Of a stretch of DNA of 64,000 nucleotides, positions 22,741 through 54,853 are shown piece by piece (within the stretch, counting starts at the first letter, position 1; each line of letters begins with the position of its first letter). The notes below the pieces were generated by a model. The model made no database searches and was not told the origin of the DNA. It saw nothing but the letters and a program-made list of their open reading frames with translations. A program made the translations under genes and the position numbers. The stretch is taken from IMG/VR virus record IMGVR_UViG_3300034072_001021, positions 1 to 64,000 of that record; one strand, 5' to 3'.

Positions 22741-22778
22741 CATAGACAGGGAGGAGCGATGCTCCTCCCTGTATGCCG
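22741..22778 (+). terminator. conserved-arm stem-loop
   Basis: CATAGACAGGGAGGAGC-GAT-GCTCCTCCCTGTATGCC, then T-rich sequence. Confidence 0.8.
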
Positions 22779-22859
22779 TCTATCCTTTATTTTTTGGTAA
22801 TTCTATGTGCGAATTTTATTTCATGCCGGCTTAGTTTTAAGAAGCAAGGGAAAACAACC

Positions 22860-24446: not shown

Positions 24447-24451
24447 CATAA

Positions 24452-24481
24452 TGGCTAGGGGTTATCCCCTAGCCTATTTTT
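24452..24481 (+). terminator. stem-loop terminator
   Basis: GGCTAGGGG-TTAT-CCCCTAGCC followed by TATTTTT. Confidence 0.7.
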
Positions 24482-24493
24482 CGAGAGCTTGCG

Positions 24494-25534
24494 ATGACTA
24501 TTCCATCGACACAGTCTATTCGATTGAGCGATATCGCAGTCGAACTAGGACTTCCACGGAACACCAAGATATCACTAGGTCATCCGGACGTCAGGACGTT
24601 TCTCGGTATCTCGTCTGGTCAGATTCGTCTCGGTCAGTTGCGTGGTGCTACATTCGGTCGAGCAATTGTCTCCCGAGTGATCTCTGCACACAGTCAGAAC
24701 CTGACAATCAATCTCAATACATTGCCTGGTTACCAGGCGGGTAAATCCGACATCACGATCACCGTAGATCCTGGTATTTACGTATGGTCGGACAATGCCA
24801 ACCCAGCATTGACGATTACTGGGGGTACTACCGGCGATACCCTTAAGCTGGTGAACAATGGATTCATCATGGGTAAGGGCGGTACAGGACAAAGCTATCA
24901 CCCTGATGCATTAGACCGTGCAGCCACTCCAGGCAATCCGGCAATGTCGATTGGCATGAATATTGTCATCGATACGCAAAACGGATATATTGCCGGCGGT
25001 GGCGGTGGCGGTGGTGGCTGGATGTCGGGCGGTGGTGGCGCCGGTGGTGGACTGGGCGGACAGTACGACGGTTATTCAACAGGTGGTGCACCTGGTGCCA
25101 TAGGTCAGCCAGGCGGCAACGGAGTTGGCGAATATGGTCCTGGTGGTGGCGGTGGCCGTATACTTCCTGGTGTCGGCGGTGGCCGACGGACAGTTACCAC
25201 CATGGTAAGTCAGGTTGGTCTAGGTGGTCAATCGGGCGGTGGCGGTGGTATGAATTATCTGTGCGGGATGTCTCCTGGTGGTGGAGGTGGTGGCTGGGGT
25301 GCTAAGGGCGGTGACCAGATAACATCCACTACCTACGATGCAACTGGTTTTACGGCCACTTCCGGTAAAGGCGGCGATGCAAATAACAATGGTGAAAACT
25401 CATCTATTGTCGGCGGCGCTCAGAGCGTTGTTAACTACATAGGTGCTCCAGGCGGGAAGGCGATCATTACAAACGGTCGCGGGGTCACATATGTTGGTTC
25501 TTCTGCATCTCGCGTATTCGGTATTGTTGGATAG
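24494..25534 (+). CDS. glycine-rich adhesin, T2/S16 gp38-like (polyglycine II)
   Basis: IMGKGGTG...GYIAGGGGGGGG and repeated GGGGG blocks, directly after the S74-type fibre. Confidence 0.7.
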   Translation: MTIPSTQSIRLSDIAVELGLPRNTKISLGHPDVRTFLGISSGQIRLGQLRGATFGRAIVSRVISAHSQNLTINLNTLPGYQAGKSDITITVDPGIYVWSDNANPALTITGGTTGDTLKLVNNGFIMGKGGTGQSYHPDALDRAATPGNPAMSIGMNIVIDTQNGYIAGGGGGGGGWMSGGGGAGGGLGGQYDGYSTGGAPGAIGQPGGNGVGEYGPGGGGGRILPGVGGGRRTVTTMVSQVGLGGQSGGGGGMNYLCGMSPGGGGGGWGAKGGDQITSTTYDATGFTATSGKGGDANNNGENSSIVGGAQSVVNYIGAPGGKAIITNGRGVTYVGSSASRVFGIVG

Positions 25535-25542
25535 AGGTAGGT

Positions 25543-25893
25543 ATGAGTATCGAAGTGCTTACTAAAGGTCATTTTTCAGCCAAACTGGTGATCCGTAACG
25601 AAGAAGAAGATACGGAGACTTGGTTGGACTATGACACGCGAGAACACGATGAAGATCCTGAAGTCGGTGTCATCCATGTGTTCAATTCTGATCTTGGTGT
25701 CTACGAGGCCTGTGCAAGTCTAGCTGAAGCAAAGGCCAGGTTTGAAGAGCGCACCAAACAACTGACCTACATCATTCCTGACGATGTGGATATGTTGAAA
25801 GCTAAGCGGGAAGAACTCGAAAGCCAAAACAAACATCTCAGGAACGTCAACCCATTTGTAATAGGTCCGGTGGTGAAGAATGATCCTGCGTAA
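25543..25893 (+). CDS. acidic hypothetical protein
   Basis: GAGG SD, 116 aa. Confidence 0.7.
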   Translation: MSIEVLTKGHFSAKLVIRNEEEDTETWLDYDTREHDEDPEVGVIHVFNSDLGVYEACASLAEAKARFEERTKQLTYIIPDDVDMLKAKREELESQNKHLRNVNPFVIGPVVKNDPA

Positions 25894-26377
25894 ACCCATT
25901 TACAACGATGGTGTCTACGATGTTGTCAGATACGCAGCACGCGACGGCGAGGTGTTCTCTGTCGCTCTGCGTGGTGTCTCCAGCAATGCGGAGATTAACA
26001 AGTATCTGGTTTACGTCACTGGCACCATCATTGTCAGAGACACGGAAGGAAATACTGTACTGATTCGGAATGAAGGGGATACCACTGACAGCAGTCATGT
26101 AGAGATCCCTGAGGGTATATACCTGTTCGAAGCAGACGGTGAGCTTTCCGAGTTCTACAGCGTCAGTAAAATGGATGGCACTGCGGTCATCCGAAAAGAA
26201 AACCGAATGCAGGAAAACGAAGAACTTCAAATCACTGAAGACTCTCTCGTATTCTTGGCGATTGGCACTATCATTAACGGGAACGGTGATGAGGTAGTTG
26301 CACCTGCCTGCTTCAATGCTGTAGCAGGAGATACTATCCTCACCACTTCTCAAACATTACTCGTCGAGCTTCGATAA
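25880..26377 (+). CDS. hypothetical beta-rich (cupin-like) protein
   Basis: Alternating beta-strand pattern, overlapping the upstream gene. Confidence 0.6.
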   Translation: MILRKPIYNDGVYDVVRYAARDGEVFSVALRGVSSNAEINKYLVYVTGTIIVRDTEGNTVLIRNEGDTTDSSHVEIPEGIYLFEADGELSEFYSVSKMDGTAVIRKENRMQENEELQITEDSLVFLAIGTIINGNGDEVVAPACFNAVAGDTILTTSQTLLVELR

Positions 26378-27043
26378 ATGATCAAGAACCTGTTCTTTCG
26401 CTTCCTAGCCTGGCTTGAGAAGAAAGGAAGACGACATGCACTGGTCACCTTCGATGGTGAAGTCATTGCATTCAAGTACTGCCTTCTCTATAACGAACTG
26501 GCTGGTCGTGAATCTGGCTGGCCAAACATCTACATCCATCAGTTCATGCGTGTCGGCGGCATTGATGGTGAGGATTTGATTCACTCGCATCCACACAGTA
26601 CGATCTCGATCATTCTGATCGGCGGTTATACTGAGTTCGTTAAGAAGCTGGGTAAAGAAGTCGAACGCAAACCAGGCGATGTCATTCGCATGCGGTACGA
26701 TGAAGATCACTCAATCGTGAAGGTCACTCCAGATACTTTCACGTTGTTCATGCATTGGTTCGAGAAGAAACGCTGGGCTATTGGTCTGCGTCCTTGTGAA
26801 GTCGTGTGTGAGCGCTGTGCATCTGAGTTCGGTCGTTGTGAGAAAGGCATCAACACCATTGATATCAAGGACATCCTCGAATACCCCGACATGGCTGTCA
26901 AATGGCGAGGTACTCGATGGGTGCAGGTGACTCCGGATTTTGATAGCAAGATCCGTATCCGTAAGGAAGCCATCGCCAAGACTGGCGTCAAGGCAAAAGA
27001 GATCACTGATTTCACTGACTTCAAAGAAATCAGACATAAATGA
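26378..27043 (+). CDS. metal-binding cupin-fold protein
   Basis: IHSHPHSTISIILIGGYTE ... HSIV ... FTLFMHW; CEVVCERC....C cluster. Confidence 0.6.
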   Translation: MIKNLFFRFLAWLEKKGRRHALVTFDGEVIAFKYCLLYNELAGRESGWPNIYIHQFMRVGGIDGEDLIHSHPHSTISIILIGGYTEFVKKLGKEVERKPGDVIRMRYDEDHSIVKVTPDTFTLFMHWFEKKRWAIGLRPCEVVCERCASEFGRCEKGINTIDIKDILEYPDMAVKWRGTRWVQVTPDFDSKIRIRKEAIAKTGVKAKEITDFTDFKEIRHK

Positions 27044-27059
27044 ATGGGCGCATTGATCA

Positions 27060-27749
27060 ATGAAGAGTTTATTGATGGCAGCATCGTTATCTGCTGGCCG
27101 TTATCCATTGAATATTCTTCAGGATATCGTAAGTCAGATAACGTTCCGTAACAACGTCGCAGTGGATGAAAGGACAAAACAACAACTGAGTCTTTCAGGA
27201 GCTGCCGCTGCACCATTTGTAGAAAATGGCCAGCTGGTAGTTATGAACCAGTCAGCATCCAGGTATCTGTTCCAGATACCTTATTTTGGAGCTGGAGACT
27301 TTACATACGAAATAATGTTTAGGCAAACCAGTGTTATTTCTGGAGAGGCGCTTCTACTGCCTTCGCAATGGCATAATGGCGCCATCAGCAATCCCGATAA
27401 CCGTCTACTGATCAGCGTGAGGCCAAATGGTTTACTGCGTGTTCAGCTAGCTCGTGGCAATACAGGGACTAGCGTTTACGGTGACAGTGCACCCAATACC
27501 ATTCTACTGAATAACGATTATCACCTTGTAGTCGAAAGGTACAATGGCGTTATTAAGGCATTTGTTAATGGGGTTGAAGTCCTGTCGTTTGCACACGCTC
27601 TACCGCTTTATGGAGAAACAAATAACCGTCTGTATAACTACTACAACGGCACCGGTTATGCCTCTTACCGCTGGTGGAATTTCAGACTGGCTAAACGAGC
27701 GATGTATCGTCACTCCGTTACCGTACCTGTGTCTCTTCCAAGAATCTGA
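27060..27749 (+). CDS. LamG/concanavalin A-like domain protein (tail-associated)
   Basis: YFGAGDFTYEI, YHLVVERYNGVIKAFVNGVE; paralogous to the second LamG domain of 28861..30660. Confidence 0.8.
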   Translation: MKSLLMAASLSAGRYPLNILQDIVSQITFRNNVAVDERTKQQLSLSGAAAAPFVENGQLVVMNQSASRYLFQIPYFGAGDFTYEIMFRQTSVISGEALLLPSQWHNGAISNPDNRLLISVRPNGLLRVQLARGNTGTSVYGDSAPNTILLNNDYHLVVERYNGVIKAFVNGVEVLSFAHALPLYGETNNRLYNYYNGTGYASYRWWNFRLAKRAMYRHSVTVPVSLPRI

Positions 27750-28198
27750 TGGAGATCATCATGGATCTGCTTCTCCCGCAGTACACTGTCGATGAGGACA
27801 AGAAGTTCAGTAATTTCGATACCCGTGAGATCGGGCGTCGTCATTATCTGATGTTGGATGACTTCTACTACTATGACGAGGTCTTCGGGCCTATCAAAGT
27901 AGAGAAGGGATTCGATACCAACTACGCAAGTCTCGATGCACTGCGTAACTTGGTCCTGTTCCCTGTCTACGCGCTTCTCGCCGATTACGGCGATAAAGCG
28001 TCAACCGTTCACGATCGTCTTTATCATGGTGTTCCTGTCGAAATGGCCGACGGTACCATGAAAATCTTTACAAGGAAAGAAGCCGATGAAGTCTTTTATC
28101 GCGCTCTGCGCTCTGAAGGAATTGCTCGCTGGCGGGCTGCTATGTTCTATGCGGGTGTCCGTGTTGGCGGCGCATCTGCATATCGCTCAGCCGAATAA
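27749..28198 (+). CDS. DUF1353-family protein
   Basis: GFDTNYAS, VHDRLY, RKEADEVFYRAL...W....YAGVRVGG. Confidence 0.8.
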   Translation: MEIIMDLLLPQYTVDEDKKFSNFDTREIGRRHYLMLDDFYYYDEVFGPIKVEKGFDTNYASLDALRNLVLFPVYALLADYGDKASTVHDRLYHGVPVEMADGTMKIFTRKEADEVFYRALRSEGIARWRAAMFYAGVRVGGASAYRSAE

Positions 28199-28278
28199 GC
28201 CACAAGACGACGACTATCTTCCAATTGTATGAGGGTAGTCTTTAAACTCTCTGACTCCTATTCGAATAGAGGTTTACC

Positions 28279-28785
28279 ATGTCTCAACTTCAAACTCTGC
28301 TGACTTCGATCGGCAATTTTTCCGACAAGGTCAAGCTGGCCATCGAAACCGGCGATGCCGCTTCGGTAGCCGAAATCGATCGCCTGATGCTCGAACTGCG
28401 TAACGAAATGGACGAGCAGACTGTTCTGATGGGCATCCCTGCCGGCGGCAACGTCGGCGTGGCCATCACCGAGCAGCTGGTCGACCTGGGCGCTGGCAAC
28501 GATATCAACTGCTCGGCCGCCAACCACTTCCTGAAGACCATCGCTGGTGCCACCACCTTCACCGTGTCGCAAGTACCGGCTGCTGGTCGTGTCTGTACCT
28601 TCACCCTGCGTCTGAAAAACGGCGGTGCCGGTACCATCACCTGGTGGAGCGCCATCAAGTGGTCCGAAGGCCAGGCTCCGACCCTGACCGCTTCCGGCAC
28701 CGACGTGATCGCGTTCACCACCGTCGATGGCGGCGTGACCTGGGAAGGCTACCTGCTCGGCAAGGACATGAAGCCGGTTGCCTAA
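28279..28785 (+). CDS. abundant virion tail-associated protein
   Basis: Extreme codon bias; FTLRLKNGGAGTITWWSAIKWSEGQAPTLTASGTDVIAF..DGG.TW.G is a common tail-protein module. Confidence 0.7.
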   Translation: MSQLQTLLTSIGNFSDKVKLAIETGDAASVAEIDRLMLELRNEMDEQTVLMGIPAGGNVGVAITEQLVDLGAGNDINCSAANHFLKTIAGATTFTVSQVPAAGRVCTFTLRLKNGGAGTITWWSAIKWSEGQAPTLTASGTDVIAFTTVDGGVTWEGYLLGKDMKPVA

Positions 28786-28807
28786 CCGCTTCTGACCAAC
28801 CGCCATA

Positions 28808-28848
28808 GACCACGAGAACATCAGTTCTCGTGGTCTTATTTATTTTTG
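28808..28848 (+). terminator. stem-loop terminator
   Basis: AGACCACGAGAAC-ATCA-GTTCTCGTGGTCT followed by TATTTATTTTT. Confidence 0.8.
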
Positions 28849-28860
28849 TAGGAGAGTAGG

Positions 28861-30660
28861 ATGCGTTCTTTAATTCTTGCTTCTGCGGCCAGGTTTATTG
28901 GTGGCTTTAAGCTAGCACCTTTGGCAAATCAATGGTCGTTTCATGACAACGAACCAATCGACGATGTAAGTGAAAAGTTCTTTTCGTATGTCGTCAATCC
29001 GACATCGTATTCACCGTATGGTTACGTATCTGGTCAACGCATTGTTGAAAACGATGACAACTACGGAACTAACTTGGCAATTGATTTCGCGCCAGGCCAG
29101 AACGAACCTTTCTGCATTCAGTGTAAGTTCAGATTGACTGCAATAAACACCGCTTATCAGGCAGGCGTCATCGCAAGGTGGCATGATACCGATACTACTC
29201 AGCGCAGCTGGGGACTTTGGATCTGGAATGACGGCAAGATCCAGTTCTCCATCTCCAATGACGGTACTGATACAAATGTGTACTGGCTGACGAGCGCGCC
29301 TGGCTTGGTTCAGATGAACCGCAATTATCATGTTGCTGTCGAACGAAATGCAGCTAATCAAATCACCATTTACTTGGATGGCATCGCGGTTGCAAGCGGA
29401 GTCGATGGACGTGAAGCATATTCTGAGTCCACCGCTTTAGTGGCTGTGCGGCGCGGTGTGCTAGGCAGTGTATGGGATATGAAGCTCTCCAAAGAGGTCG
29501 TCTTTGGCGCACCGTTTGGATCTAATGTACCAGGTAAATTTGGTAAGATCACCGAAGCACAGCGTCAGAAATACACTGACGCAATCGCTGCAGATATTGT
29601 TTATCAAATGACTGGTCGCCGCAGCTCCAGTGTTAACGAGAAGAACGGCACCCCGATGGTGCTAAACAAGAGCAATATGTACAACGGTAAGTTGTTCGTA
29701 TCCAACTTGAATGGGACGGCCTATTACTCGGCTCCGGTCGATTACTTCGGTGCCGGTGACTTTACGCTGGAGTGTAAACTTACCGTCGAATCGAGCATCA
29801 ATGGCGACGGCCTACTTGTGATGTCGCATTGGTACAATGGCGGCGTGACAAACAACAATAACCGATGGATTGTCTGTATTTTGCCTAATGGCGCTATACA
29901 GGTGGTATTTGCTAGATCTGGAGTCGCGGGTGATTACACTGCTCGCGTTACGGCCGCTGGAACCATCGTCCAGAACAAGCGATATCACATAGTTGTAGAA
30001 CGCTATAACGGCATCATTAAGCTTTTCGTGAATGGTGTTGAAAAACTATCGTGGAGTCAACCGGAACCACTGTGGGCAACTTCTGGGAATAAGATTTCCA
30101 ATACGTTCAATGGATCGTCATACGCCCAACATCGTATCTGGGATATTCGGATTGCTAAGCGAGCGATGTATAAACATGTCTCTCCGAAGCGTGTCGAGTC
30201 TTTCCCCAAAATGCCGGTTGACTGGAGAACGCAGAAGCCAACTCATCGGTTGATCGTAGGCTCTAATGACGTAGCCAATGGAAGTGTGGTGTATAGGGGA
30301 TTTGCTAAGCATTTCCTCTATGGCTCCTCTACGGTTTCGTTTGGAGAACTGCCGCACGAACTCTATTACAACACTCAGACCGGTAAGGTCATGCGCATTG
30401 TGGCGCTGATCCATCAGACAAATGGACATATCTTGTTTGCACTTAAGGAATCCAATGAACCATACGTTCAAGGGATGCCGACCATGACAAACAAGATCAA
30501 GATTGCAGGCGGTCCTACGGTTGACTTTGATCTAGGGATTGCGTTGCCGGCTGCCACAGATCCGACAATATTGGCAAGAAGCTTCGGTAAAGACAATGTC
30601 GCAAACTGGGCTACAGCGTTTGCAACTGACGAGACTGAAGTATCGTTCTCGTTTGTATAA
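28861..30660 (+). CDS. two-LamG-domain tail/receptor-binding protein
   Basis: Two ConA-like repeats (NYHVAVERN...TIYLDG; RYHIVVERYNG..KLFVNG). Confidence 0.8.
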   Translation: MRSLILASAARFIGGFKLAPLANQWSFHDNEPIDDVSEKFFSYVVNPTSYSPYGYVSGQRIVENDDNYGTNLAIDFAPGQNEPFCIQCKFRLTAINTAYQAGVIARWHDTDTTQRSWGLWIWNDGKIQFSISNDGTDTNVYWLTSAPGLVQMNRNYHVAVERNAANQITIYLDGIAVASGVDGREAYSESTALVAVRRGVLGSVWDMKLSKEVVFGAPFGSNVPGKFGKITEAQRQKYTDAIAADIVYQMTGRRSSSVNEKNGTPMVLNKSNMYNGKLFVSNLNGTAYYSAPVDYFGAGDFTLECKLTVESSINGDGLLVMSHWYNGGVTNNNNRWIVCILPNGAIQVVFARSGVAGDYTARVTAAGTIVQNKRYHIVVERYNGIIKLFVNGVEKLSWSQPEPLWATSGNKISNTFNGSSYAQHRIWDIRIAKRAMYKHVSPKRVESFPKMPVDWRTQKPTHRLIVGSNDVANGSVVYRGFAKHFLYGSSTVSFGELPHELYYNTQTGKVMRIVALIHQTNGHILFALKESNEPYVQGMPTMTNKIKIAGGPTVDFDLGIALPAATDPTILARSFGKDNVANWATAFATDETEVSFSFV

Positions 30661-30690
30661 CTGTCCTTGATTTAAATTCATGAGGTAAAC

Positions 30691-31344
30691 ATGGCTATTC
30701 AAAGACTTCTGGCTGCTGCACAGACCAGACTGAGGAAATCGTTCCCCAGTGGACTTAAGTACTGGTGGAAACTCCAGACTGATTACGCTGACTCGGTTGG
30801 TGGCAAGAACGGTACTCCTTCAGGTTCTCTGAGTTTTGTTACTCATCTTGGTCGGAAGGCACTTAGACTCGTTCCGAATGGTGGCTGGGTGACGATCCCC
30901 AACTTGACATTCGGTAACCAACCATGGACTTTGAGTCTCTGGTATGCTCCGGTGGACATGAGTGTTTATCATCACTTGCTGAGCAGTGAAGATCACGCCA
31001 CACTGCTGTTCAAAATCGCTCGTAGTGATGATCCTAATGCGGGTAAATCTTACGTTTACGCCGCATCTGCACTTCCCGCTGGAAGCAAGTTTTCCAGCAT
31101 TGTTGTGCCTTCTGGTGTATGGACTCTCATCACGTATGTTTACGACGGCAGCACATTGAAGTTCTACTTCAATAACGTTCTGCGTGGTTCTTCGCCAGTG
31201 ACCATGAACGCTCCTGCGCGTAATTTCCGAATTGGCTACGGTAACGCTGGCGAATACTCGAAGGGTTATCAATCCGATGTACGGATCTTCGACCGTGCCC
31301 TGACTGTTCAAGAGATTGAGCAGATCATGAACACTGTTCAATGA
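30691..31344 (+). CDS. LamG-domain protein
   Basis: WTLSLWY, WTLITYVYDGSTLKFYFN, SDVRIFDRALT..EI. Confidence 0.82.
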   Translation: MAIQRLLAAAQTRLRKSFPSGLKYWWKLQTDYADSVGGKNGTPSGSLSFVTHLGRKALRLVPNGGWVTIPNLTFGNQPWTLSLWYAPVDMSVYHHLLSSEDHATLLFKIARSDDPNAGKSYVYAASALPAGSKFSSIVVPSGVWTLITYVYDGSTLKFYFNNVLRGSSPVTMNAPARNFRIGYGNAGEYSKGYQSDVRIFDRALTVQEIEQIMNTVQ

Positions 31345-31349
31345 TACGG

Positions 31350-31382
31350 CATACAGGCAGGGACGATGTCCCTGCCTGTATG
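31350..31382. terminator. bidirectional stem-loop between convergent genes
   Basis: CATACAGGCAGGGAC-GAT-GTCCCTGCCTGTATG, 15-bp perfect stem. Confidence 0.8.
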
Positions 31383-31384
31383 GT

Positions 31385-33397
31385 TTATGCCGCGAGTGCG
31401 GCTTGCACTACAGTGTTTTCACCGACCACGAAGTTACTAACGTAACGTCCACGACCTTGAGTAGCGCGAACACGAGCGATATTCATCCGATAACCAGCTG
31501 CAGCCTCTGCAGCGATGTTGTAACCGATTTGAATATTGCCATTGTAGTCGGCTACGCGTGTCATGGCTGCCTGGGCAACTAAACTACCATCGACGTACAG
31601 GTAAGCTGTACCTGACCGAATTGAGACGGCTACATGATGCCACTGACTGTCGGCAATCACTGTAGATGACTCGATGTAAACACCACTACGAACGAAGAAC
31701 ACAGCTTTACCGTTAGCGATACCCAGCATCCACGACCCTGCAGTGCTTGCATGATACTGACCAACGATAGGCATTGCTGTCACACCCATGTAGTCGGTAT
31801 TGACCCAACCTTCGATCGTACTGTCAACTGCACCCAACATAGCACGAGTGCCGTTGTTATAGTTGATGCCACCGGCAGCCCCAGACTGGACCGTCAACGT
31901 ATCTTGACCGAAAAGTTTACGAGAAGGATCGATCGATACGCCAGCTCGTTGGGAGACGATCTGGAACATATCTACGCCCGCCGACACGTCCTTGCTGAAC
32001 GGGAACATGGCGTTGACCTTAGCGTAGTAAGGATCATACGCTGATTGCACGACCGTACCGTTGGTCGCAAAAGCTGTCTTCATCTTCGGAGTGAAGTTGC
32101 TGTAGTAGCGGCCATCACCACGGGTAATGCGCACCCCAGAAATGAAACCAGTGAACTGCTCTGTGGCGTCGTTAGAGGCACCGATAGTTACAGGGATGGT
32201 GCTGGGTTGGATTGCTGCTGTGATTGACACTGTACCAATAAGCTCACCATCTACAAACAGACTAATGGTGTTACCGACACGAGTCGCTGCCAGGTGAGTC
32301 CAGCGGTTAGGTTGGATTGCCGAGCCTGTCACAGGACCAACCACTGTGGTCCATGATGAGTTATTGATGGACGTTCCGATAACAGGCTGCATGTTATTCA
32401 GACCGAGCTTCCATCCACCTGACTGAGCTGCTGTACGACGACCGACCAGGTGGACGTTCCCAGAAATCACTGCTGATGGACGAACCCAACATTCGACGCA
32501 CCATTCCTGAGAACCGAAATCAAACAGACCGTTTTGGTCTGCGCGGTAGTAACTTCCAGCTGAGGCGAACTCCATGCTGGCACTACCGATCTTCTTGGTC
32601 AGTGTACTGATATTGGGCGACCCTACCGCTGTGAGTGTAGCGGCGCTGGCTTGGTTAACCATTGCGCTTCCAGAATGATTCTGGAGAAGCAGAGTGACAT
32701 TAACCCAATAAGGGTCGAAGGATGCCTCAGCGCTGCCGATTTCAAACGGTAAAGTTGGCGGTGTAAAGTTAGCAGTGTAGACGGCTTCTGCCGAAACACG
32801 TACTTGGTCTACTCGACCATTAACGTGATAGTTACCGCCACCGCTGTAGTTACCGACAGTGAACGCAGTATGTGCCAAGCTAGTCGCAAACGTGTTTTGA
32901 CCGCGCATTACACCATCTACATACAGCTGTACCAGACCATTGCGGCGAACAACCGCCATGTGATGCCATTTGCCGACTGTCGGAACGTAGCCAGTTGGGA
33001 TCAGGACTGTTCCCGCGTTACTATTGAGGATAATTTCCCCGTTGTAGTAACGGAGAATGAATCCGTTATTGCCATAATCGAAAATGTACTGGTTACTGGC
33101 CGCCAGACTGTCGAAGTTGACAAACAACTCGATGGTGAAGTCGGTATGGAGTGCAAACGGACTGCCGCCGACAGTGAAGCGAGTACCAGATGCGCAGCGG
33201 AAACACTGACCACCAAATACACCAACACCTATCTGATGACTACGAGCGTTGACGATGGGGTTGCGAGGGTCTACCTGGACACCTTCCTCAACCATGGGCA
33301 TTGCAATTACATTGTCCCAATTACCTACAGCCGGAACGACCTCAGGAGTGCTATTGATAGCATTCATGATAGCCGCCGCAAGAATAATCTTGTTCAT
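31385..33397 (-). CDS. three-LamG-domain tail-associated protein
   Basis: Three ConA-like repeats (DFTIELFV..WHHMAVVR; EWCVECWVRP..WTHLAATR; STIEGWV..WHHVAVS), with DPY...V linkers. Confidence 0.85.
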   Translation of the reverse strand: MNKIILAAAIMNAINSTPEVVPAVGNWDNVIAMPMVEEGVQVDPRNPIVNARSHQIGVGVFGGQCFRCASGTRFTVGGSPFALHTDFTIELFVNFDSLAASNQYIFDYGNNGFILRYYNGEIILNSNAGTVLIPTGYVPTVGKWHHMAVVRRNGLVQLYVDGVMRGQNTFATSLAHTAFTVGNYSGGGNYHVNGRVDQVRVSAEAVYTANFTPPTLPFEIGSAEASFDPYWVNVTLLLQNHSGSAMVNQASAATLTAVGSPNISTLTKKIGSASMEFASAGSYYRADQNGLFDFGSQEWCVECWVRPSAVISGNVHLVGRRTAAQSGGWKLGLNNMQPVIGTSINNSSWTTVVGPVTGSAIQPNRWTHLAATRVGNTISLFVDGELIGTVSITAAIQPSTIPVTIGASNDATEQFTGFISGVRITRGDGRYYSNFTPKMKTAFATNGTVVQSAYDPYYAKVNAMFPFSKDVSAGVDMFQIVSQRAGVSIDPSRKLFGQDTLTVQSGAAGGINYNNGTRAMLGAVDSTIEGWVNTDYMGVTAMPIVGQYHASTAGSWMLGIANGKAVFFVRSGVYIESSTVIADSQWHHVAVSIRSGTAYLYVDGSLVAQAAMTRVADYNGNIQIGYNIAAEAAAGYRMNIARVRATQGRGRYVSNFVVGENTVVQAALAA

Positions 33398-50027: not shown

Positions 50028-51278
50028 GTGGCTAATGTATCTCAAATCAACATCAACAGCTATGACAACCACCTTCTGATTACTGGTGTTGATCAGAGCA
50101 ATCTGATTGATCATGTGCCCGCTATGGTCTATCGTGCGCGCATGACTCGTGAAGGCCTCGTCCTGATCAAAGATAGACCGAACTTCACCCTGCCTCAGTT
50201 GCGCTTCGGTAAGCACAACCGTTATTTCTCTGCCATCTGTGCCGAATACGATCCGCTTGGATCTAGCACGGGTGTTCTGCTCGCTGGTCATAAGGGTTCT
50301 GGCAAGTCTCTCATGGCTGAAGAACTCGGTAACTGGATGATCAAACGCGATCTCCCGGTTATCATGATCGATGACGATCTCTGCCATCACACCATCAACC
50401 TCATCATCCGTGCTGTCGGTCCCTGCATGGTGTTGTTCGACGAGTTTGGTAAAGTGTACTCGGACGAAGACAAGCGCAATCGCCTGTTGACAGTGTTCAG
50501 TGACACGTCCTACGTCGGTGTCATGTTCGTGATCACCGGTAACTGCCGTGAAGAGTTCGGCGAATTCCTGGTAAACCGTCCACAGCGCTTCCGTTTTGCG
50601 ATTCATTATGAATCGGGTGTCGATGTCGAGTTGGCATGTGACGTCCTCAAGAAAATGCAAGTGCGTGAGGAAATGCACGAGACGTTGCTGGCGTATGTAC
50701 AAGGCCAACAAATCCAGCACGGTGGTCTGAATATCGACTCTTTCTTGGCAGTGGTGCGGGCTTCTGCGAACTGCAAGACTGTGGCTGAATTGGAAGAAGT
50801 CACCGAGATCATGAACGTACCGCGCATGGTCAAAAAGGAGTGGCGGGTCATCAGTGTCGTAGCGACTCCGAAACACGAACTGGCTGAAGATTTCGGATAC
50901 AGCGCCGATATCACCAAGTCGTTTGTCATCGACGGCAATCCACTGATGCTGAGCATCGCCGAAAACCGTAACACTGGCCGTAGCTGGGAAAAGGACGAGG
51001 AGGGATGTTACATCACCAAGTCGTTTGATCCCAGTGAAGATTTTTCGGATGTTGTAATTAACCACGAAGGACAATACTATGATTTCGAGATCATAGTCAG
51101 TTATTGTTATTCGGTCAACGCACAAGGTAAACCGACCAGTAAGCGTGGTAAGGACCATCCTCGCATGGCGGAGATGGAAAGCCTTCATGCTCAACGCAAT
51201 GGTAACAGTCGCACGGCTATGTTTGGTATGGAATACACCCCGTCTGCTTTTCTTGCTGCAAAACACCAACAGGGCTAA
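50028..51278 (+). CDS. AAA+ ATPase
   Basis: Walker A GHKGSGKS, Walker B VLFDEFGK, NRPQRF. Confidence 0.88.
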   Translation: MANVSQININSYDNHLLITGVDQSNLIDHVPAMVYRARMTREGLVLIKDRPNFTLPQLRFGKHNRYFSAICAEYDPLGSSTGVLLAGHKGSGKSLMAEELGNWMIKRDLPVIMIDDDLCHHTINLIIRAVGPCMVLFDEFGKVYSDEDKRNRLLTVFSDTSYVGVMFVITGNCREEFGEFLVNRPQRFRFAIHYESGVDVELACDVLKKMQVREEMHETLLAYVQGQQIQHGGLNIDSFLAVVRASANCKTVAELEEVTEIMNVPRMVKKEWRVISVVATPKHELAEDFGYSADITKSFVIDGNPLMLSIAENRNTGRSWEKDEEGCYITKSFDPSEDFSDVVINHEGQYYDFEIIVSYCYSVNAQGKPTSKRGKDHPRMAEMESLHAQRNGNSRTAMFGMEYTPSAFLAAKHQQG

Positions 51279-51288
51279 GGAGTCCATC

Positions 51289-51609
51289 ATGAAGATCGAA
51301 CAAAACGAAAACCTGCTCGGCATGCTGCGTCATCTGGCCAAAGACCAAGAGAAGCTGAACGCGGTCGTGGAATCTCATGCCAACCATCAGCTGACCTTCC
51401 GTATCGACGACAGCATCCAGCTGGGCGTCAAGGTCGATGCCAAAAAGGGCCTGAAGAAAGGCCAGTCCATCCAGATCGTGATGACTGACCTCTCCATCGA
51501 ATCCGACGACAAGGCCACTCCGGTGCCTGCCAGTGCTGTGCAGAAGGCTTCTCCGAGCCGGGGCTGCAGTCTGGAAGACAAGGCCGAGATGAAGGCCCTG
51601 TACCGCTGA
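51289..51609 (+). CDS. hypothetical protein
   Basis: AAGGAG SD before ATG 51289; extreme codon bias. Confidence 0.75.
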   Translation: MKIEQNENLLGMLRHLAKDQEKLNAVVESHANHQLTFRIDDSIQLGVKVDAKKGLKKGQSIQIVMTDLSIESDDKATPVPASAVQKASPSRGCSLEDKAEMKALYR

Positions 51610-51616
51610 TCATCAC

Positions 51617-51637
51617 TGGGAGGCTTCGGCCTCCCAT
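51617..51637 (+). terminator. stem-loop (TTCG loop)
   Basis: TGGGAGGC-TTCG-GCCTCCCA. Confidence 0.65.
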
Positions 51638-51653
51638 CTATTCCGGGGGCAAC

Positions 51654-52181
51654 ATGACCGCTATTGTGTTTCATCAAGGTAAGTTGATGGGCGATCGTAA
51701 GAACGCTCTCTTTACCAATCCGGTTACCTTTGTCGATGCGCCTAAGGTTTTCGTCAGTGAAGACAAGATGTTTGCATTCGGCATCAGTGGTAAAACGATC
51801 TCGGCAGAAACCAAGCCGCGTTATGAAGAGATCATCCGTAAGATCATCGAACACATGACGATCTCAGGTACTGATCGAAAAGCAGTTGACCAGATCGTTG
51901 AGATCGAGAACGGCCCGATCGACTTCACTCACGGCATCATCTGCACCAAGACGCAACAGTTCCTCATTCAGGACATTGGTAAGGTCTATGTGCGGCGATT
52001 TGATGGTGCCACGCATGGGTGTGGCACAGGTGGTGCTCAGATGGCTGTAATGCTGCGCTGTGGGCTCTCTCCGACCCAGGCGTACAACAAGATCACCATG
52101 ATCGATCACTTGTCCGGTGCAAAGTTCGACAGCATCGACACAAGTCGTCTGAAACCATTCGTCATTAAAGGGGATAAGTGA
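51654..52181 (+). CDS. Ntn-hydrolase (HslV/proteasome-beta-like) peptidase
   Basis: Met-Thr start (Thr1 nucleophile), TAIVFHQGKLMGD, Lys in DAPKVF, GCGTGG, D..SG near the C-terminus. Confidence 0.6.
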   Translation: MTAIVFHQGKLMGDRKNALFTNPVTFVDAPKVFVSEDKMFAFGISGKTISAETKPRYEEIIRKIIEHMTISGTDRKAVDQIVEIENGPIDFTHGIICTKTQQFLIQDIGKVYVRRFDGATHGCGTGGAQMAVMLRCGLSPTQAYNKITMIDHLSGAKFDSIDTSRLKPFVIKGDK

Positions 52182-52699
52182 TGCCTGCCATTTATCGTGA
52201 CGGTAAACTGGGTTTCCGTCTTAACCCTCATGTTCGAGAGGGTGTGTACGTAAAGTACATGATCGATGGGTTCGATCATTTCTTTACCAAACACGGTTTC
52301 ATCTATCCGATGGGAAGTCTCGGTCCCAGTCTTGAATCTGTGCTGGAAGGTCGCCCTGTATTCGGAGATAAGTTCCGCAATTCGATTAACTGCAGCTATA
52401 TCGTAGTTGATCATTACGGGCAGATCGTCCAGGCTGACGTCTACGTCAACGACGATAAAGAATACACCGTTGATGTGCACAGTCTGCCTCAAGGCTCTGG
52501 GGTGAAGTGGGTAGCCGCCGATCGTGAATGGGATCGTGATATCATTTCGGCCATTCTTATGGCGGATCTGAGTGATTCCGAAATGAACCAGCAGTTCAAC
52601 GAGCAGGGTGTTAACGAAGGTCACAACTTCGTTTTCTTGATGGTCGACTACATCGTCACCAAACTCAATGAACTGTTCCCAAAAGAACCCAAAAACTGA
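52178..52699 (+). CDS. hypothetical protein, possible inactive paralog of the upstream Ntn protein
   Basis: N-terminus MPAIYRDGKL resembles MTAIVFHQGKL; no Thr1. Confidence 0.5.
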   Translation: MMPAIYRDGKLGFRLNPHVREGVYVKYMIDGFDHFFTKHGFIYPMGSLGPSLESVLEGRPVFGDKFRNSINCSYIVVDHYGQIVQADVYVNDDKEYTVDVHSLPQGSGVKWVAADREWDRDIISAILMADLSDSEMNQQFNEQGVNEGHNFVFLMVDYIVTKLNELFPKEPKN

Positions 52700-52712
52700 C
52701 ATCGGTGCAAGC

Positions 52713-53144
52713 GTGAAAAAGAAAGTCGTGATCGTTGGTTTCCCAGGCATTGGGATGACTGAACTGACCAAGCGGCAAAAAGAATACGTGGAGGTAGAAA
52801 CCTCTGCGTCGGGGGTATCGGCAGGTGTCATCAAGAACCTGCTCGATGAAGGTCTTAAAGTCCTTATTCCGTTCGACAAGGATATCTGTGACGCACTGGT
52901 CAAAGAGAAGATCAAGTTCGTCATCGTGTATCCGAGTCGTTCGCTTAAGGCTGACATCTGTAGTCGCATCAGTCCGAGAAGTATCGACGACACTCGCATC
53001 ACCGATCTCATCAACCACTGGGACGAACACATCGACCAGTGCTCGACACAGGAGTGTTATACCCGAGTAGTACTCACCAAGTCTAACAGTTATCTGTGTG
53101 ACCTGGTCGTCTACATTGAGAATCTGTTTACCAATTGTAAATAA
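52713..53144 (+). CDS. P-loop kinase-like protein with a degenerate Walker A
   Basis: VVIVGFPGIGMT, with Met in place of the catalytic Lys of GFPG.GKT; GTG start inferred. Confidence 0.55.
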   Translation: MKKKVVIVGFPGIGMTELTKRQKEYVEVETSASGVSAGVIKNLLDEGLKVLIPFDKDICDALVKEKIKFVIVYPSRSLKADICSRISPRSIDDTRITDLINHWDEHIDQCSTQECYTRVVLTKSNSYLCDLVVYIENLFTNCK

Positions 53145-53149
53145 TTACA

Positions 53150-54115
53150 GTTGGCGCGTTCTCTATGTGAACAGAAAATAATTAACTCACAACAAGGACG
53201 GATTCGATGTTTGGGCTACTAACATCGTCCGTGCTTCGTCTGGCACTGAGTGCGGGTCGGTGGGTTGCAGATCTCTTAGTGGAACTGCCGCCTTTACCGA
53301 CCGAACGGTCAGGACCCATCCTGACCTTGTCTCCTGAGCCCGAACCGGCAGCTGGCGCCAACCGCGACCTTAAGGCGGTCGTATGGAGGCGTGCAGTAGC
53401 CTGAAGCACGTAATTTGATCATGCATAAGCCGATCCTGGCCGGGCGCTGGCCAGCATAATGCAATAAGGGGAGTGTAGCCATAGAAATCAATGCGCTTGT
53501 GATAGCAGCTCTAGCTGTACTAAGCGCTGGTGATATTGATGCTCGTACTGGAGGACTCGTGATGACCGCCGATGTCGGTGTTCACTACGAGATGCCGCTT
53601 ACTGAGTCGCCGGAAGACCCGGTCATACTCCGTCAGGCCATGCCTGATTGGTTACTTGGTGAAGCGAGGGCAATTCTGGACGAGGATCGTCATCAGTGGC
53701 TTAGCACAGTCGAAAGCTTTGCTAGCACATGGACGCACTGTGGGAACTGGCACGGGCACTGCGGGTCCCGTAAGCCAAACCATAGAGCCGTCTACCAATA
53801 TCCACGGTGACTAAACCTTCGAAACCGATTAAGTTCGGCCTTAGAGCCAGTGGGCTCTCTCATGCAGCCGTGCATATAGCGAAATGCAAGTCTCTTGATC
53901 AACTGTAAGGTCATCATCTGCGACTATCCAATAGGGTTTCATGAGGCCAAGGCGGATATTGTAGTTATGGCAGCAGTGGGGATGAGCAGCGTCTTCTGAA
54001 AGTGATAATGGGACAACGACACCGAATGAACTAACGCTCGGCAGCCTCCAAGAGGAGGAAACAGTACCCAGATGGGGCTGTGCGCGAGTATTGTTGGATC
54101 GGTGTCAATGTCTTT
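53150..54115 (+). ncRNA. candidate large (~960 nt) ornate structured non-coding RNA
   Basis: By far the largest gap without a credible gene outside the thyA intron; contiguous hairpins and enclosing helices (see findings); AT-rich promoter-like 5' flank and T-rich 3' flank. Confidence 0.65.
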
Positions 54116-54167
54116 CCTTTATTTTCTTTTGCCGATTTTATGAGGATCAACCTTTATAAGGACTGTT

Positions 54168-54551
54168 ATGTCATTCCAAAGTGACTTCGATGTAAGGCAC
54201 TTGCCAGAAGGACGCAAGTACTTACTGAAAGAGTTTGTCTTTAATGACCCTGAACACGGCAAGGTAGTGGTTTATCCAGAATACCTTACTGGCAGACGGG
54301 TAAGGCGACGACCCATGCTCTGGCCCACCATACAGCGTCTAAGCTGGGGTAGGGCAGACAGAGCCGAAACCATAAGAGACTATCTGTACAACGGGGGCAT
54401 CGTGCACTGCAATGTCCCAAACAAGAAAGAAGCAGATGAGATATTCCACCGTGCGATGATCGCGGAGGGTGTCCCGAAATGGCGACGTATTACTTTGTAC
54501 AATTATGTCCGCTTGTTTGGTCGACCTCTCTGGAAAGGATGGAGTAAATGA
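54168..54551 (+). CDS. DUF1353-like protein (degenerate)
   Basis: RDYLY, KKEADEIFHRAM...GVPKWRR..LY..VRLFG; the His of the HD.LY motif is replaced by Arg. Confidence 0.7.
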   Translation: MSFQSDFDVRHLPEGRKYLLKEFVFNDPEHGKVVVYPEYLTGRRVRRRPMLWPTIQRLSWGRADRAETIRDYLYNGGIVHCNVPNKKEADEIFHRAMIAEGVPKWRRITLYNYVRLFGRPLWKGWSK

Positions 54552-54853
54552 ATAGTCTTGTCTCTGTATCTGCTGCAAACACTGGCGCTCCAGGTACGCC
54601 CTCGAGCCCTGAGCGTTGGCTAGCCGCACGTATCACCGCCAGCAACCTCAACGTGTTTCTTCAAATGTGGAAACGCACGCCTAAAGAACTTCTCACAGGC
54701 GATGAGTTCGAGGCTGCCAAACACATGGTCACCCACATCCAAGCCAGCGCCGGTGTCTTTATCGATGCTATCCATACTGCCCACACCATGGATCAGCTCA
54801 TCGACATTAACCAAGAATTTTACAATATGGCTGCTGCTAAAAGTGGTGTCTGA
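54548..54853 (+). CDS. hypothetical protein
   Basis: ATGA overlap, GGAG SD. Confidence 0.7.
   Translation: MNSLVSVSAANTGAPGTPSSPERWLAARITASNLNVFLQMWKRTPKELLTGDEFEAAKHMVTHIQASAGVFIDAIHTAHTMDQLIDINQEFYNMAAAKSGV

What the first reader, a model, noticed from the sequence alone, without database searches (positions are those of the whole stretch)
53150..54115. Candidate ~960-nt ornate non-coding RNA in a jumbo phage
SEEN: this genome otherwise packs genes with gaps usually under 120 nt, yet about 1 kb between a P-loop gene and a DUF1353 gene holds no credible gene. The listed ORFs there are short, lie on both strands and lack the SD and codon bias of neighbours. The segment is tiled with helices found by eye: GTTGGCGC(53150-57)/GCGCCAAC(53355-62) enclosing a 5' domain; CGATGTT/AACATCG within ACGGA/TCCGT (53198-53232); GGTCGGT(53255)/ACCGACC(53296); GGTCAGGA-CCCA-TCCTGACC (53307-26); CGACC/GGTCG; CGTGC/GCACG; CTGGCC/GGCCAG (53436-54); nested ATCAAT..GCGCTT..CAGCT/AGCTG..AAGCGC..ATTGAT (53487-53540); CTCGT/ACGAG; TCAGGC-CAT-GCCTGA (53633-47); TGGCTTA(53697)/TAAGCCA(53771), which competes with a local hairpin (possible pseudoknot or switch); CCGA-TTAAGT-TCGG; GAGCC/GGCTC; and a 3' multistem domain closed by GACA..GACACCGA(54012-25)/TCGGTGTC..TGTC(54099-112). 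It is flanked by AAATAATTAC (53139-48, resembling the phiKZ middle-promoter motif) and a T-rich 3' tract. Two loops carry the palindrome TTAA. KNOWN: phage-borne giant RNAs of unknown function (GOLLD, ROOL) are in this size class and form multimeric cages. INFERENCE: this is a large structured RNA, possibly of a new class (scaffold, protein sponge, or phage-nucleus or virion component). I cannot match it to group I/II introns, tmRNA, RNase P or SRP.
Basis: partly seen in the sequence, partly recalled or inferred. Interest (0 to 1): 0.88.

Follow-up and report, generated by a model that had tools for sequence, protein, structure and literature searches.

The report
Structured, translated RNA unit in jumbo phages
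The 1-kb "empty" stretch is a conserved, self-contained transcription unit found in a clade of giant Pseudomonas-type phages: its RNA hairpins are kept by compensatory mutations, but it also keeps two small reading frames open, so it is more likely a heavily structured small-protein messenger than a giant non-coding RNA.

Summary
The gap is real. Nothing in it matches Pfam, PHROGs, Rfam or a 1.8-billion-protein library. It is not empty, though.

Window 53139-54132 (+) belongs to a family I found in at least 10 diverged lineages of roughly 250-kb phages, including the cultured Pseudomonas phage pPa_SNUABM_DT01. All members share one plan:
- an AT-rich block plus an invariant TATG, resembling a phiKZ-type promoter;
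- UAAGGA-N5-8-AUG opening ORF-A (65-77 codons, peptide not conserved);
- a long hairpin with a UUAAGGC loop;
- an AGGAG-like box plus AUC/AUA opening ORF-B (99-110 codons, hydrophobic N-terminus);
- an invariant CCGA-UUAAGU-UCGG hairpin flanked by lineage-specific hairpins;
- a three-way-junction terminator with a U tract.

Two hairpins show strong covariation (0 of 500 shuffles reach the observed score).

Both ORFs stay open everywhere and indels respect the frame. Yet substitutions show no third-position excess and the peptides are not conserved.

Best reading: a structured, translated RNA of a new family, not a GOLLD/ROOL-like RNA. A purely non-coding RNA is not excluded.

The parts
53139..53167 (+). 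Promoter-like block. It consists of AT-rich AAATAATTAC (53139-48), 15 nt, then TATG (53164-67). G53167 is the putative +1.
   Evidence: TAC-N14-16-TATG is invariant in all 11 lineages compared. It occurs once in the 64-kb window. The geometry matches the phiKZ AT-rich -24 motif and T-3ATG+1 late motif described in PMC7598289. The start site itself is inferred.
53167..53206 (+). 5' leader with Shine-Dalgarno box AAGGA (53194-98)
   Evidence: UAAGGA-N5-8-AUG is conserved in every lineage. The same box precedes the neighbouring DUF1353 gene.
53207..53404 (+). ORF-A, 65 codons. It is kept open but its peptide is not conserved. It contains hairpins 53198-53232, 53255-53302 and 53307-53326.
   Evidence: The frame is open for 65-77 codons (123 in L024) from the conserved AUG in 10 lineages. 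Nucleotide identity between lineages is only 42-56% and there is no BLASTP similarity. The one indel is 3 nt. Substitutions by codon position are 20/28/28.
53347..53401 (+). Long hairpin A. The upper stem is 53365-69/53377-81, the loop is UUAAGGC, and the lower stems end in the conserved GGWGGCGW box. It lies at the 3' end of ORF-A.
   Evidence: 98.3% of cells are paired and 5 of 6 pairs carry compensatory changes. The covariation score is 0.85 against 0.26 in shuffles (0/500), and slid registers give 25-55% paired. The extended stem is seen in every lineage's fold.
53436..53454 (+). Hairpin CTGGCC/GGCCAG
   Evidence: Invariant in close relatives. L027 has a different hairpin (TCCGG/CCGGA) at the same place.
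53465..53810 (+). Shine-Dalgarno-like box TAAGGGGAG (53465-73) plus ORF-B. ORF-B runs from ATA 53481 to TGA 53808-10 (109 codons). An internal GGAGGA-ATG at 53550-64 gives the 82-aa product that gene callers predict.
   Evidence: An AGGAG-like box followed 4-7 nt later by an in-frame AUC/AUA is present in all lineages. The frame is 99-110 codons everywhere, and a 15-residue N-terminal window has hydropathy >= 2.1 everywhere. There are no indels in 363 nt at 75% identity. Against coding: there is no third-position excess, tblastx is nearly equal in all three frames, there are no relatives beyond the clade, and the AF2 pLDDT is 52.
53750..53775 (+). Hairpin H5, GCACGG...CCCGUAAGC. ORF-B ends in it or within about 45 nt after it in all lineages.
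   Evidence: It is a conserved island in all lineages. The same local hairpin appears in each single-sequence fold.
53783..53813 (+). Variable hairpin Hv1
   Evidence: A different stem sequence occupies the same place in each lineage. Segment folding against shuffles gives a combined Stouffer Z of -4.9.
53825..53838 (+). Invariant hairpin CCGA-UUAAGU-UCGG
   Evidence: Identical in all lineages. DT01 has UCGA/UCGA, a C-G to U-A swap. There is a single copy in the window.
53843..53858 (+). Variable hairpin Hv2 (AGAGCC/GGCTCT)
   Evidence: 100% of cells are paired and 5 of 6 pairs are compensatory. The covariation score is 1.05 against 0.36 (0/500 shuffles). Stouffer Z is -5.9. Caveat: the alignment windows were chosen as hairpins, although their position is fixed 4-9 nt after the invariant hairpin.
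53862..53875 (+). Hairpin ATGCA-GCCG-TGCAT (found in the window-type lineages only)
   Evidence: Conserved in groups A and B, L013 and L027. One A-to-G change gives a G-U pair.
53880..54009 (+). Lineage-specific insert of the 3' region
   Evidence: Absent from L008 and L014, and from the L018-, L023- and DT01-type elements.
54010..54132 (+). Three-way-junction terminator. The outer stem is GGGACA/UGUCUU and the closing stem is GACACCGA (54018-25)/UCGGUGUC (54099-106). It has two inner hairpins and is followed by a U-rich tract to about 54132.
   Evidence: Fold. The closing stem carries 3 compensatory pairs among close relatives. It has a different sequence in L018, DT01, L023, L024 and L025, always followed by AAGACUUC-like sequence plus a U tract.

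Best explanation
Window 53139-54132 (+) is one autonomous transcription unit of a previously undescribed family carried by DT01-like jumbo phages.

Shown:
- A conserved plan: promoter-like motif, leader, ORF-A, hairpin A, ORF-B, 3' hairpins, terminator.
- RNA hairpins maintained by compensatory substitutions on the + strand.
- Two frames that stay open in all lineages.

Inferred:
- The transcript (about 965 nt, from G53167 to the U tract) is made by the phage's own RNA polymerase from a phiKZ-type TATG promoter, and it is translated.
- ORF-A acts mainly through being translated. Ribosomes starting at the conserved UAAGGA-AUG must run through hairpin A, which would remodel the downstream fold. 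Its peptide is free to drift and is even swapped between near-identical phages.
- ORF-B starts at a weak AUC/AUA codon behind a strong Shine-Dalgarno box. It yields a roughly 100-residue membrane-targeted or secreted peptide that evolves quickly.
- The 200-330-nt 3' region, with its invariant UUAAGU hairpin and branched terminator, ends and probably stabilises the RNA or binds a factor.

In short, this is a heavily riboregulated small-protein messenger (a dual-function RNA) rather than a pure non-coding RNA. The biological role of the peptide is unknown; an accessory function at the cell envelope is my guess.
For: Family and plan:
- Homologues were recovered through ORF proxies, a neighbouring gene and DNA patterns.
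- DT01 carries the element at the syntenic spot.
- The multi-lineage alignment shows conserved islands.

RNA structure:
- Hairpin A covaries and Hv2 covaries.
- Hv1 and Hv2 are present with different sequences in all lineages.
- The terminator closing stem has 3 compensatory pairs, and helix 53697/53771 has one A-U to C-G swap.
- G-U pairs and the U tract fix the strand as +.

Translation:
- UAAGGA-AUG is conserved.
- ORF-A is open for 65-123 codons and ORF-B for 99-110 codons in every lineage, while the other frames close quickly. Stop frequency is about 0.05 per codon, so 65 open codons has a chance of about 0.04 per independent lineage. A new member, L028, met both predictions.
- The indel in ORF-A is 3 nt, and there are none in the ORF-B body.
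- The hydrophobic N-terminus is present in all lineages. DT01 reads like a Sec signal peptide if the AUC codon is the start.

Promoter:
- The TATG and AT-rich block are invariant.
- The phiKZ promoter motifs are described in PMC7598289, and DT01 is reported to encode multisubunit RNAP genes in PMC8541153.
Against: - Substitutions are spread evenly over codon positions in both ORFs. Examples are 15/14/20, 9/7/10 and 35/26/27, whereas flanking genes have 55-83% at position 3.
- tblastx similarity is nearly equal in all three frames.
- Codon usage is not gene-like.
- There is no protein relative outside the clade in 5.8 billion clustered or 1.84 billion representative proteins, and no Pfam or PHROGs hit.
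- The AlphaFold model of ORF-B is unconfident: pLDDT 52, with only the N-terminal helix near 70.
- ORF-B needs a non-AUG start.
- A stretch of 48 nt inside ORF-B is identical across lineages that are 25% diverged, with no synonymous change. That points to constraint on the nucleotides, not the protein.
- The proposed coupling between ORF-A translation and ORF-B initiation is not supported by a consistent predicted pairing.
- There are no expression data.
Confidence: 0.5

Rival explanations
1. It is a genuine large non-coding RNA of about 0.9-1 kb, a new class in the size range of GOLLD or ROOL. The open frames and Shine-Dalgarno-like boxes are by-products or serve non-coding roles. For example, UAAGG motifs displayed in loops and single strands might bind 30S subunits or a protein.
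For: - Covarying hairpins lie inside and outside the ORFs.
- Conservation is at the nucleotide level, without synonymous relaxation.
- There is no third-position bias, similarity is equal in all frames, there are no protein relatives and the AF2 model is poor.
- Loop sequences are invariant.
- TAAG/TAAGG is about 1.5-3 times over expectation in each lineage, though weakly significant individually.
- It has the lowest folding energy and z-score in the window.
Against: - Two frames are kept open at the same places in lineages that are otherwise unalignable. The chance is roughly 0.04 per lineage for ORF-A alone.
- AUG, AUC and Shine-Dalgarno spacing are conserved.
- Indels preserve the frame.
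- Every ORF-B has a hydrophobic N-terminus despite different sequences.
- No long-range or domain-closing helices are supported, and H1 is refuted.
- Whole-element folding z-scores overlap those of coding controls.
Confidence: 0.27
2. These are two ordinary, fast-evolving small accessory genes of the moron type that annotation missed. The RNA hairpins are only routine regulatory or terminator elements.
For: - Promoter-gene-terminator cassette layout.
- Gene callers on related contigs call both ORFs, and DT01 annotates ORF-A as PA10_00292.
- The ORF-A part is swapped between L023 and L024: 42% identity there against 93% downstream.
- The locus is variable between relatives.
Against: - Ordinary genes, even orphan ones, show third-position excess, and these do not.
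- Hairpin A sits inside ORF-A and covaries.
- A 200-330-nt 3' region of conserved or covarying hairpins, with an invariant 14-nt hairpin, exceeds what a simple terminator needs.
- Islands inside ORF-B are invariant at the nucleotide level.
Confidence: 0.15
3. It is a DNA-level element, such as a replication origin, a packaging or recombination site, or the decayed remnant of a larger gene.
For: - The locus is a hot spot of insertions and deletions among relatives.
- Inverted repeats could also act in DNA.
Against: - G-U pairs work on one strand only.
- There are no iterons or an AT-rich core. GC is 53-56%, above the flanks.
- The promoter, Shine-Dalgarno boxes, AUG and U-tract terminator have a fixed polarity.
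- No open piece on either strand matches any family.
- There is no tblastx similarity to the tail-fibre region of DT01.
Confidence: 0.05

Closest known systems
GOLLD and ROOL (large ornate RNAs often carried by phages and prophages)
   Same: - Size class of 0.6-1 kb.
- Phage-borne and of unknown function.
- Many stem-loops, some kept by covariation.
   Different: - No match to either covariance model at any threshold.
- No tRNA neighbourhood.
- It carries two conserved open frames with ribosome-binding boxes.
- No supported long-range or pseudoknotted architecture.
- Multimer formation is untested.
Dual-function RNAs and leader-ORF systems (hok/mok mRNA of plasmid R1; SgrS, RNAIII, SR1; long-distance translational coupling in RNA phage MS2). 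Recalled from established knowledge.
   Same: - A highly structured transcript.
- An upstream ORF that matters by being translated rather than through its peptide.
- A downstream small hydrophobic-start peptide.
   Different: - Much longer: about 0.9-1 kb against 0.2-0.5 kb.
- ORF-A and ORF-B do not overlap in the window.
- No antisense RNA or 5'-3' closing helix was found.
- No consistent occlusion of the ORF-B start was predicted.
- ORF-B, at about 100 aa, is larger than type I toxins.
Phage moron cassettes (promoter, accessory gene, terminator inserted between conserved genes)
   Same: - Autonomous promoter and terminator.
- Sits in a variable locus between conserved blocks.
- Dispensable in some natural variants (L014, L021/L022).
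   Different: - The nucleotide sequence and RNA hairpins, not the peptides, are what is conserved.
- The element itself is kept at the same place across deep divergence.
phiKZ-type non-virion RNA polymerase promoters (T-3ATG+1, AT-rich motif near -24; PMC7598289)
   Same: An invariant TATG, with an AT-rich block centred about 24 nt upstream of its G.
   Different: - The TAC-N15-TATG composite is specific to this element in the window.
- No start-site data exist for this clade.

Membership tests
GOLLD (Rfam RF01998) / ROOL (Rfam RF03087) | Match to the family covariance model | tested here: not met
   No hit at gathering threshold in the window. No hit at E<=10 in 52900-54400 other than a chance Qrr match. 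No hit at E<=0.1 in five relatives.
GOLLD / ROOL | Frequent adjacency to tRNA genes in phage genomes (from knowledge of the families) | tested here: not met
   No tRNA or tmRNA gene in the 64-kb window.
GOLLD / ROOL | Assembly into multimeric cages | not testable with these tools
   This needs SEC or cryo-EM of the transcript.
Group I / group II introns, RNase P, tmRNA, SRP, OLE, HEARO | Match to Rfam models; for introns, insertion within a host gene | tested here: not met
   No Rfam match. The element lies between complete genes.
Structured RNA (generic) | Helices maintained by compensatory substitutions across homologues | tested here: met
   Hairpin A has 5 of 6 pairs compensatory (0/500 shuffles), and so does Hv2. 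The terminator stem has 3 compensatory pairs. Hv1 and Hv2 give Stouffer Z of -4.9 and -5.9. This holds for local hairpins only. The global architecture is not established, and helix 53150/53355 is refuted.
Structured RNA (generic) | Folding energy well below shuffles and below the genomic background | tested here: inconclusive
   The window element has z of -5.8 to -6.8 against a background of -2.9 +/- 1.2. Relatives give -2.9 to -6.5 against controls of +0.3 to -3.9.
Ordinary protein-coding gene | Ribosome-binding site, start codon and an open frame conserved in relatives, with frame-preserving indels | tested here: met
   ORF-B relies on AUC/AUA as its start.
Ordinary protein-coding gene | Purifying selection on the protein: third-position excess and best similarity in the coding frame | tested here: not met
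   The ORFs have 33-41% of substitutions at position 3, against 55-83% in flanking genes. tblastx gives 187/175/148 bits in the three frames. There is no BLASTP similarity between lineages.
Ordinary protein-coding gene | Relatives or domains in protein libraries; a confident fold | tested here: not met
   AF2 gives pLDDT 52 and pTM 0.19.
Intrinsic terminator | A stable G+C-rich stem followed directly by a U tract | tested here: met
   The branched stem at 54010-54114 is followed by a U-rich tract to about 54132, with conserved architecture and covarying closing stems. The simple scanner did not call it because the stem is branched.
phiKZ-type late/middle promoter | A TATG overlapping the start site, with an AT-rich motif near -24 | tested here: met
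   The motif is present and invariant. The definition comes from PMC7598289. Use as a promoter is not testable here.
Type I toxin-antitoxin (hok/mok/sok-like) | A short hydrophobic toxin ORF, an overlapping leader ORF, an antisense RNA, and a 5'-3' closing interaction | tested here: inconclusive
   A leader-like ORF-A and a hydrophobic start of ORF-B are present. The ORFs do not overlap in the window, no antisense promoter was found, and the 5'-3' helix is refuted.

The most novel reading that the evidence does not exclude
This is a new class of large phage RNA that works as RNA while engaging ribosomes. It would be transcribed by the jumbo phage's own polymerase and would display SD-like UAAGG/UUAAG motifs in invariant loops and leaders. 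The open frames would be kept only so that ribosomes can load and travel. It could be a ribosome-capturing or ribosome-remodelling scaffold, or a factor-binding RNA used for host takeover, rather than a messenger for functional proteins.
Probability: 0.17. Interest if true: 0.85.

Novelty: new variant of a known kind. Interest (0 to 1): 0.6.

Why it matters
Jumbo phages that build a nucleus-like compartment and carry their own RNA polymerases are intensively studied, but their RNA-level biology is almost unexplored.

This element has an unusual combination of properties:
- It is conserved at one genomic position across deep divergence.
- Its hairpins are protected by compensatory mutation.
- It has two reading frames whose openness, but not whose sequence, is preserved.

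That pattern usually marks translation-dependent riboregulation, and it is not described for phages of this kind.

The element is present in a cultured, sequenced phage (pPa_SNUABM_DT01), where 640 nt of it are left unannotated. The question 'RNA, peptide or both?' is therefore directly testable. The work also gives a concrete caution for genome scans: a gap with no gene call and many helices is not by itself a non-coding RNA.

Tried and rejected
- blastn of the region and of the L024 element against 50,697 phage records found nothing. DT01 was found only through synteny and a 12-nt seed.
- IMG/VR scans with exact peptide words of the neighbours and of ORF103 returned only the source contig, as did a 25-base pattern from the 5' domain.
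- The pattern GCACGG-N50-80-CGATTAAGTTCG was too weak. 120+ hits in bacterial genomes across all phyla and 12 of the 16 IMG/VR hits (all but the source contig, L023, L024 and the new member L028) are chance matches. The genome scan is therefore uninformative.
- The exhaustive protein search of the 82-aa ORF gave only repeat-protein artefacts such as HEAT and Ig repeats.
- MAFFT X-INS-i/Q-INS-i structural alignment was not installed. No whole-element structural alignment or covariance model was built, so the global architecture remains unresolved.
- I tested the idea that the conserved GGUGGCGAC box masks the ORF-B start. In every lineage the box instead forms the 3' strand of hairpin A.
- The hypothesis of a decayed tail-fibre gene upstream of DUF1353 found no similarity in any frame.
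- A sigma-70-like site (TTGAGA-18-AATAAT, 53116-45) lies inside the P-loop gene and is not shared by distant lineages, so I did not adopt it.
- AlphaFold of ORF-B was uninformative.
Full report
**Source and setting.** The window is positions 1-64000 of IMGVR_UViG_3300034072_001021, a 259-kb viral contig; an identical copy is Ga0247725_1000019. The closest isolate is Pseudomonas phage pPa_SNUABM_DT01 (265.5 kb), at 65% amino-acid identity on a 619-aa protein. Its authors report multisubunit RNA polymerase genes (PMC8541153). The finding lies between a P-loop kinase-like gene (52668-53144; T5-like relatives) and a DUF1353 gene (54168-54551).

**Checking the observation.**
- No Rfam family matches, at gathering score or at E<=10.
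- No open piece on either strand matches Pfam or PHROGs.
- A codon log-likelihood trained on 40 genes of the window finds no gene-like signal. It also scores the real DUF1353 gene near zero, so this test is weak here.
- The + strand folds to -376.9 kcal/mol with z = -5.8 or -6.8, against z = -3.6 for the minus strand.
- The needed calibration is that 41 other 966-nt windows of this genome give z = -2.9 +/- 1.2, with a minimum of -5.1. The region is the most stable in the window, but only by about 2.5-3 background standard deviations.

**Finding relatives.** DNA searches of the phage collection found nothing. I therefore used the small ORFs as proxies in the protein collection.
- The 103-aa and 65-aa ORFs each had a handful of near relatives, and their contigs could be fetched.
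- This gave a 98% group (L006, L007, L012), an 86% group (L008-L011, L015, L016), a more distant L013, and deletion variants.
- L014 lacks 53327-53802, and L008 lacks about 53887-54010.
- The DUF1353 neighbour led to L018 (53% protein identity), which carries a collinear but highly diverged copy. It also led to L021/L022, where almost the whole locus is deleted.
- Two islands shared by the window and L018 made a search pattern that recovered L023, L024, L025 and L027. A looser pattern added L028.
- DT01 has the element at the syntenic position. Its annotated PA10_00292 is ORF-A, and the following 640 nt are unannotated.
- None of five relatives tested (L018, L023, L024, L027 and the DT01 region) has an Rfam match.

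**Common plan.**
1. An AT-rich block ending in TAC, 14-16 nt, then an invariant TATG.
2. A short leader with UAAGGA, followed 5-8 nt later by AUG.
3. ORF-A.
4. A long irregular hairpin (hairpin A) whose 3' strand is the conserved GGUGGCGAC-like box.
5. An AGGAG-like box, followed 4-7 nt later by an in-frame AUC or AUA that opens ORF-B.
6. The hairpin GCACGG...CCCGUAAGC.
7. A lineage-specific hairpin (Hv1).
8. The invariant hairpin CCGA-UUAAGU-UCGG.
9. A second lineage-specific hairpin (Hv2).
10. A branched terminator domain closed by a lineage-specific stem, followed by AAGACUUC-like sequence and a U tract.

The TATG, with an AT-rich block centred about 24 nt upstream of its G, matches what is described for phiKZ late and middle promoters (PMC7598289). 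The composite motif occurs once in the window.

**RNA structure.**
- Hairpin A aligns without gaps in ten lineages. 98.3% of cells pair and five of six pairs carry changes on both sides. The covariation score is 0.85 against 0.26 in shuffles (0 of 500), and slid registers pair at 25-55%.
- Hv2 in five lineages with equal loop length has all cells paired and five of six pairs compensatory, again with 0 of 500 shuffles. Those windows were picked as hairpins, but their position is fixed relative to the invariant hairpin.
- Segments holding Hv1 and Hv2 fold better than shuffles in every lineage, with Stouffer Z of -4.9 and -5.9. The lineages are not fully independent.
- DT01 changes the invariant hairpin's stem from CCGA/UCGG to UCGA/UCGA.

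- The terminator closing stem gains three compensatory pairs.
- TGGCUUA/UAAGCCA gains one A-U to C-G swap but also two breaks.
- GGUCGGU/ACCGACC, CGACC/GGUCG, UCAGGC/GCCUGA and GAGCC/GGCUC show only pairing-compatible changes.
- The nested helix at 53487-53540 is broken in L013, where the sequence has been replaced.
- GTTGGCGC/GCGCCAAC is broken at seven positions.

G-U pairs and the U tract place the RNA on the + strand. Whole-element folding z-scores of relatives (-2.9 to -6.5) only partly separate from those of flanking coding controls (+0.3 to -3.9). I could not establish a global architecture.

**Coding evidence, for.**
- From the conserved AUG, the frame is open for 65, 66-69, 66, 67, 75, 77, 77, 123, 71 and 74 codons in the ten lineages, while the other two frames usually close within a few to about 60 codons.
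- Stops occur at about 0.05 per codon in these sequences, so 65 open codons has a chance of about 0.04. The ORF-A bodies of at least six lineages are mutually unalignable at 42-56% identity.
- ORF-B is 99-110 codons everywhere. It ends in or shortly after the GCACGG hairpin and always begins with a strongly hydrophobic 15-residue window.
- In DT01, reading from the AUC gives a textbook signal-peptide pattern.
- The only indel inside ORF-A among close relatives is 3 nt. L023, L024 and L025 have no indel in 363 nt of ORF-B at 75% identity.
- L028, found afterwards, met all these expectations.

**Coding evidence, against.**
- Flanking genes have 55-83% of substitutions at third positions, while ORF-A and ORF-B have 33-41% in every comparison.
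- Translated similarity between L023 and L025 is 187, 175 and 148 bits in the three frames.
- Peptides of different lineages show no BLASTP similarity beyond what conserved nucleotides impose.
- An exhaustive HMMER search found only the ORF's own cluster plus repeat-protein artefacts.
- The AlphaFold model has pLDDT 52.
- Within ORF-B, a 48-nt stretch is identical across lineages that differ by 25% overall.
- L023 and L024 are 93% identical in ORF-B but only 42% identical in ORF-A. ORF-A therefore behaves as a swappable cassette that nevertheless keeps its start signals and length, and reads through hairpin A.

**Interpretation.** The constraint that can be demonstrated is on RNA sequence and local structure. 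The constraint on the frames is that they remain open, not on what they encode. I therefore favour a structured, translated RNA. ORF-A would be a leader-type frame whose translation through hairpin A matters. ORF-B would be a weakly initiated, membrane-targeted small peptide. A long structured 3' region ends in a branched terminator. The specific coupling mechanism is an inference, and my one concrete version of it failed. A pure non-coding RNA remains a serious rival. A DNA element or a pseudogene is unlikely. Natural variants lacking part or all of the element (L014, L008, L021/L022) suggest an accessory role, if those assemblies are correct.

**Novelty.** I found no description of such an element. 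A 2026 review of jumbo phages mentions only that phiKZ expresses non-coding RNAs (PMC13282480). The PaBG and DT01 genome papers do not discuss the locus.

Noticed in passing
window 52668-54551, compared with L001 9200-11140, L018, L021/L022 and L024: The block between the conserved 173-aa gene (52178-52699) and the conserved 101-aa gene (54548-54853) is a variable locus. The window adds a P-loop kinase-like gene and a DUF1353 gene around the element. L018 has a 212-aa gene plus DUF1353, L023 a tail-fibre-like gene, and L024 and DT01 have neither. L021/L022 fuse the AAA-ATPase gene directly to window 54035 onward, deleting about 3 kb.
   Followed up: partly
window 54168-54551: The DUF1353 gene scores about zero on the window's own codon model (-0.015 per codon against a mean of 0.32), yet it shows normal third-position excess in relatives (64%). 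It looks recently acquired. In DT01 and PaBG its relatives sit next to tail-fibre genes and are annotated as tail assembly chaperones.
   Followed up: partly
L023 versus L024 (ORF-A part of the element): Two phages are 93% identical across ORF-B and the 3' region but share only about 42% identity in the ORF-A body, with the promoter, Shine-Dalgarno box, AUG and hairpin A retained. This looks like a cassette-type replacement of a small ORF inside an otherwise conserved RNA.
   Followed up: partly
whole window (966-nt windows): Ordinary coding sequence of this genome folds about 3 standard deviations better than its dinucleotide shuffles at this window length (mean z -2.9). Raw RNAfold z-scores of long windows overstate structure here.
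   Followed up: yes
window 50028-52181: An AAA-family ATPase gene (416 aa) is followed by a small ORF and then a 175-aa gene whose DT01 counterpart is annotated as an HslV-like protease. This may be a phage-encoded HslUV-like pair lying immediately upstream of the variable locus.
   Followed up: no
MW735835 (DT01) 250160-250799 = L001 10161-10800: The public record leaves 640 nt unannotated. This stretch holds the family's ORF-B frame (about 108 codons, signal-peptide-like start), the invariant-type hairpin and the branched terminator.
   Followed up: yes
window 53550-53564: In the window-type lineages only, an internal GGAGGA-N6-ATG lies in frame at codon 28 of ORF-B. It would give the 82-aa product that gene callers predict, lacking the hydrophobic start. 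It is absent from L013, L027 and the other lineages.
   Followed up: partly
window 22773-33397: This is a cluster of tail-fibre-type genes: a phage tail fibre repeat with an endosialidase-chaperone domain, and two Laminin-G/concanavalin-like proteins. One of these has a weak match to a clostridial neurotoxin receptor-binding-type lectin fold, which I take to be a generic carbohydrate-binding fold.
   Followed up: no
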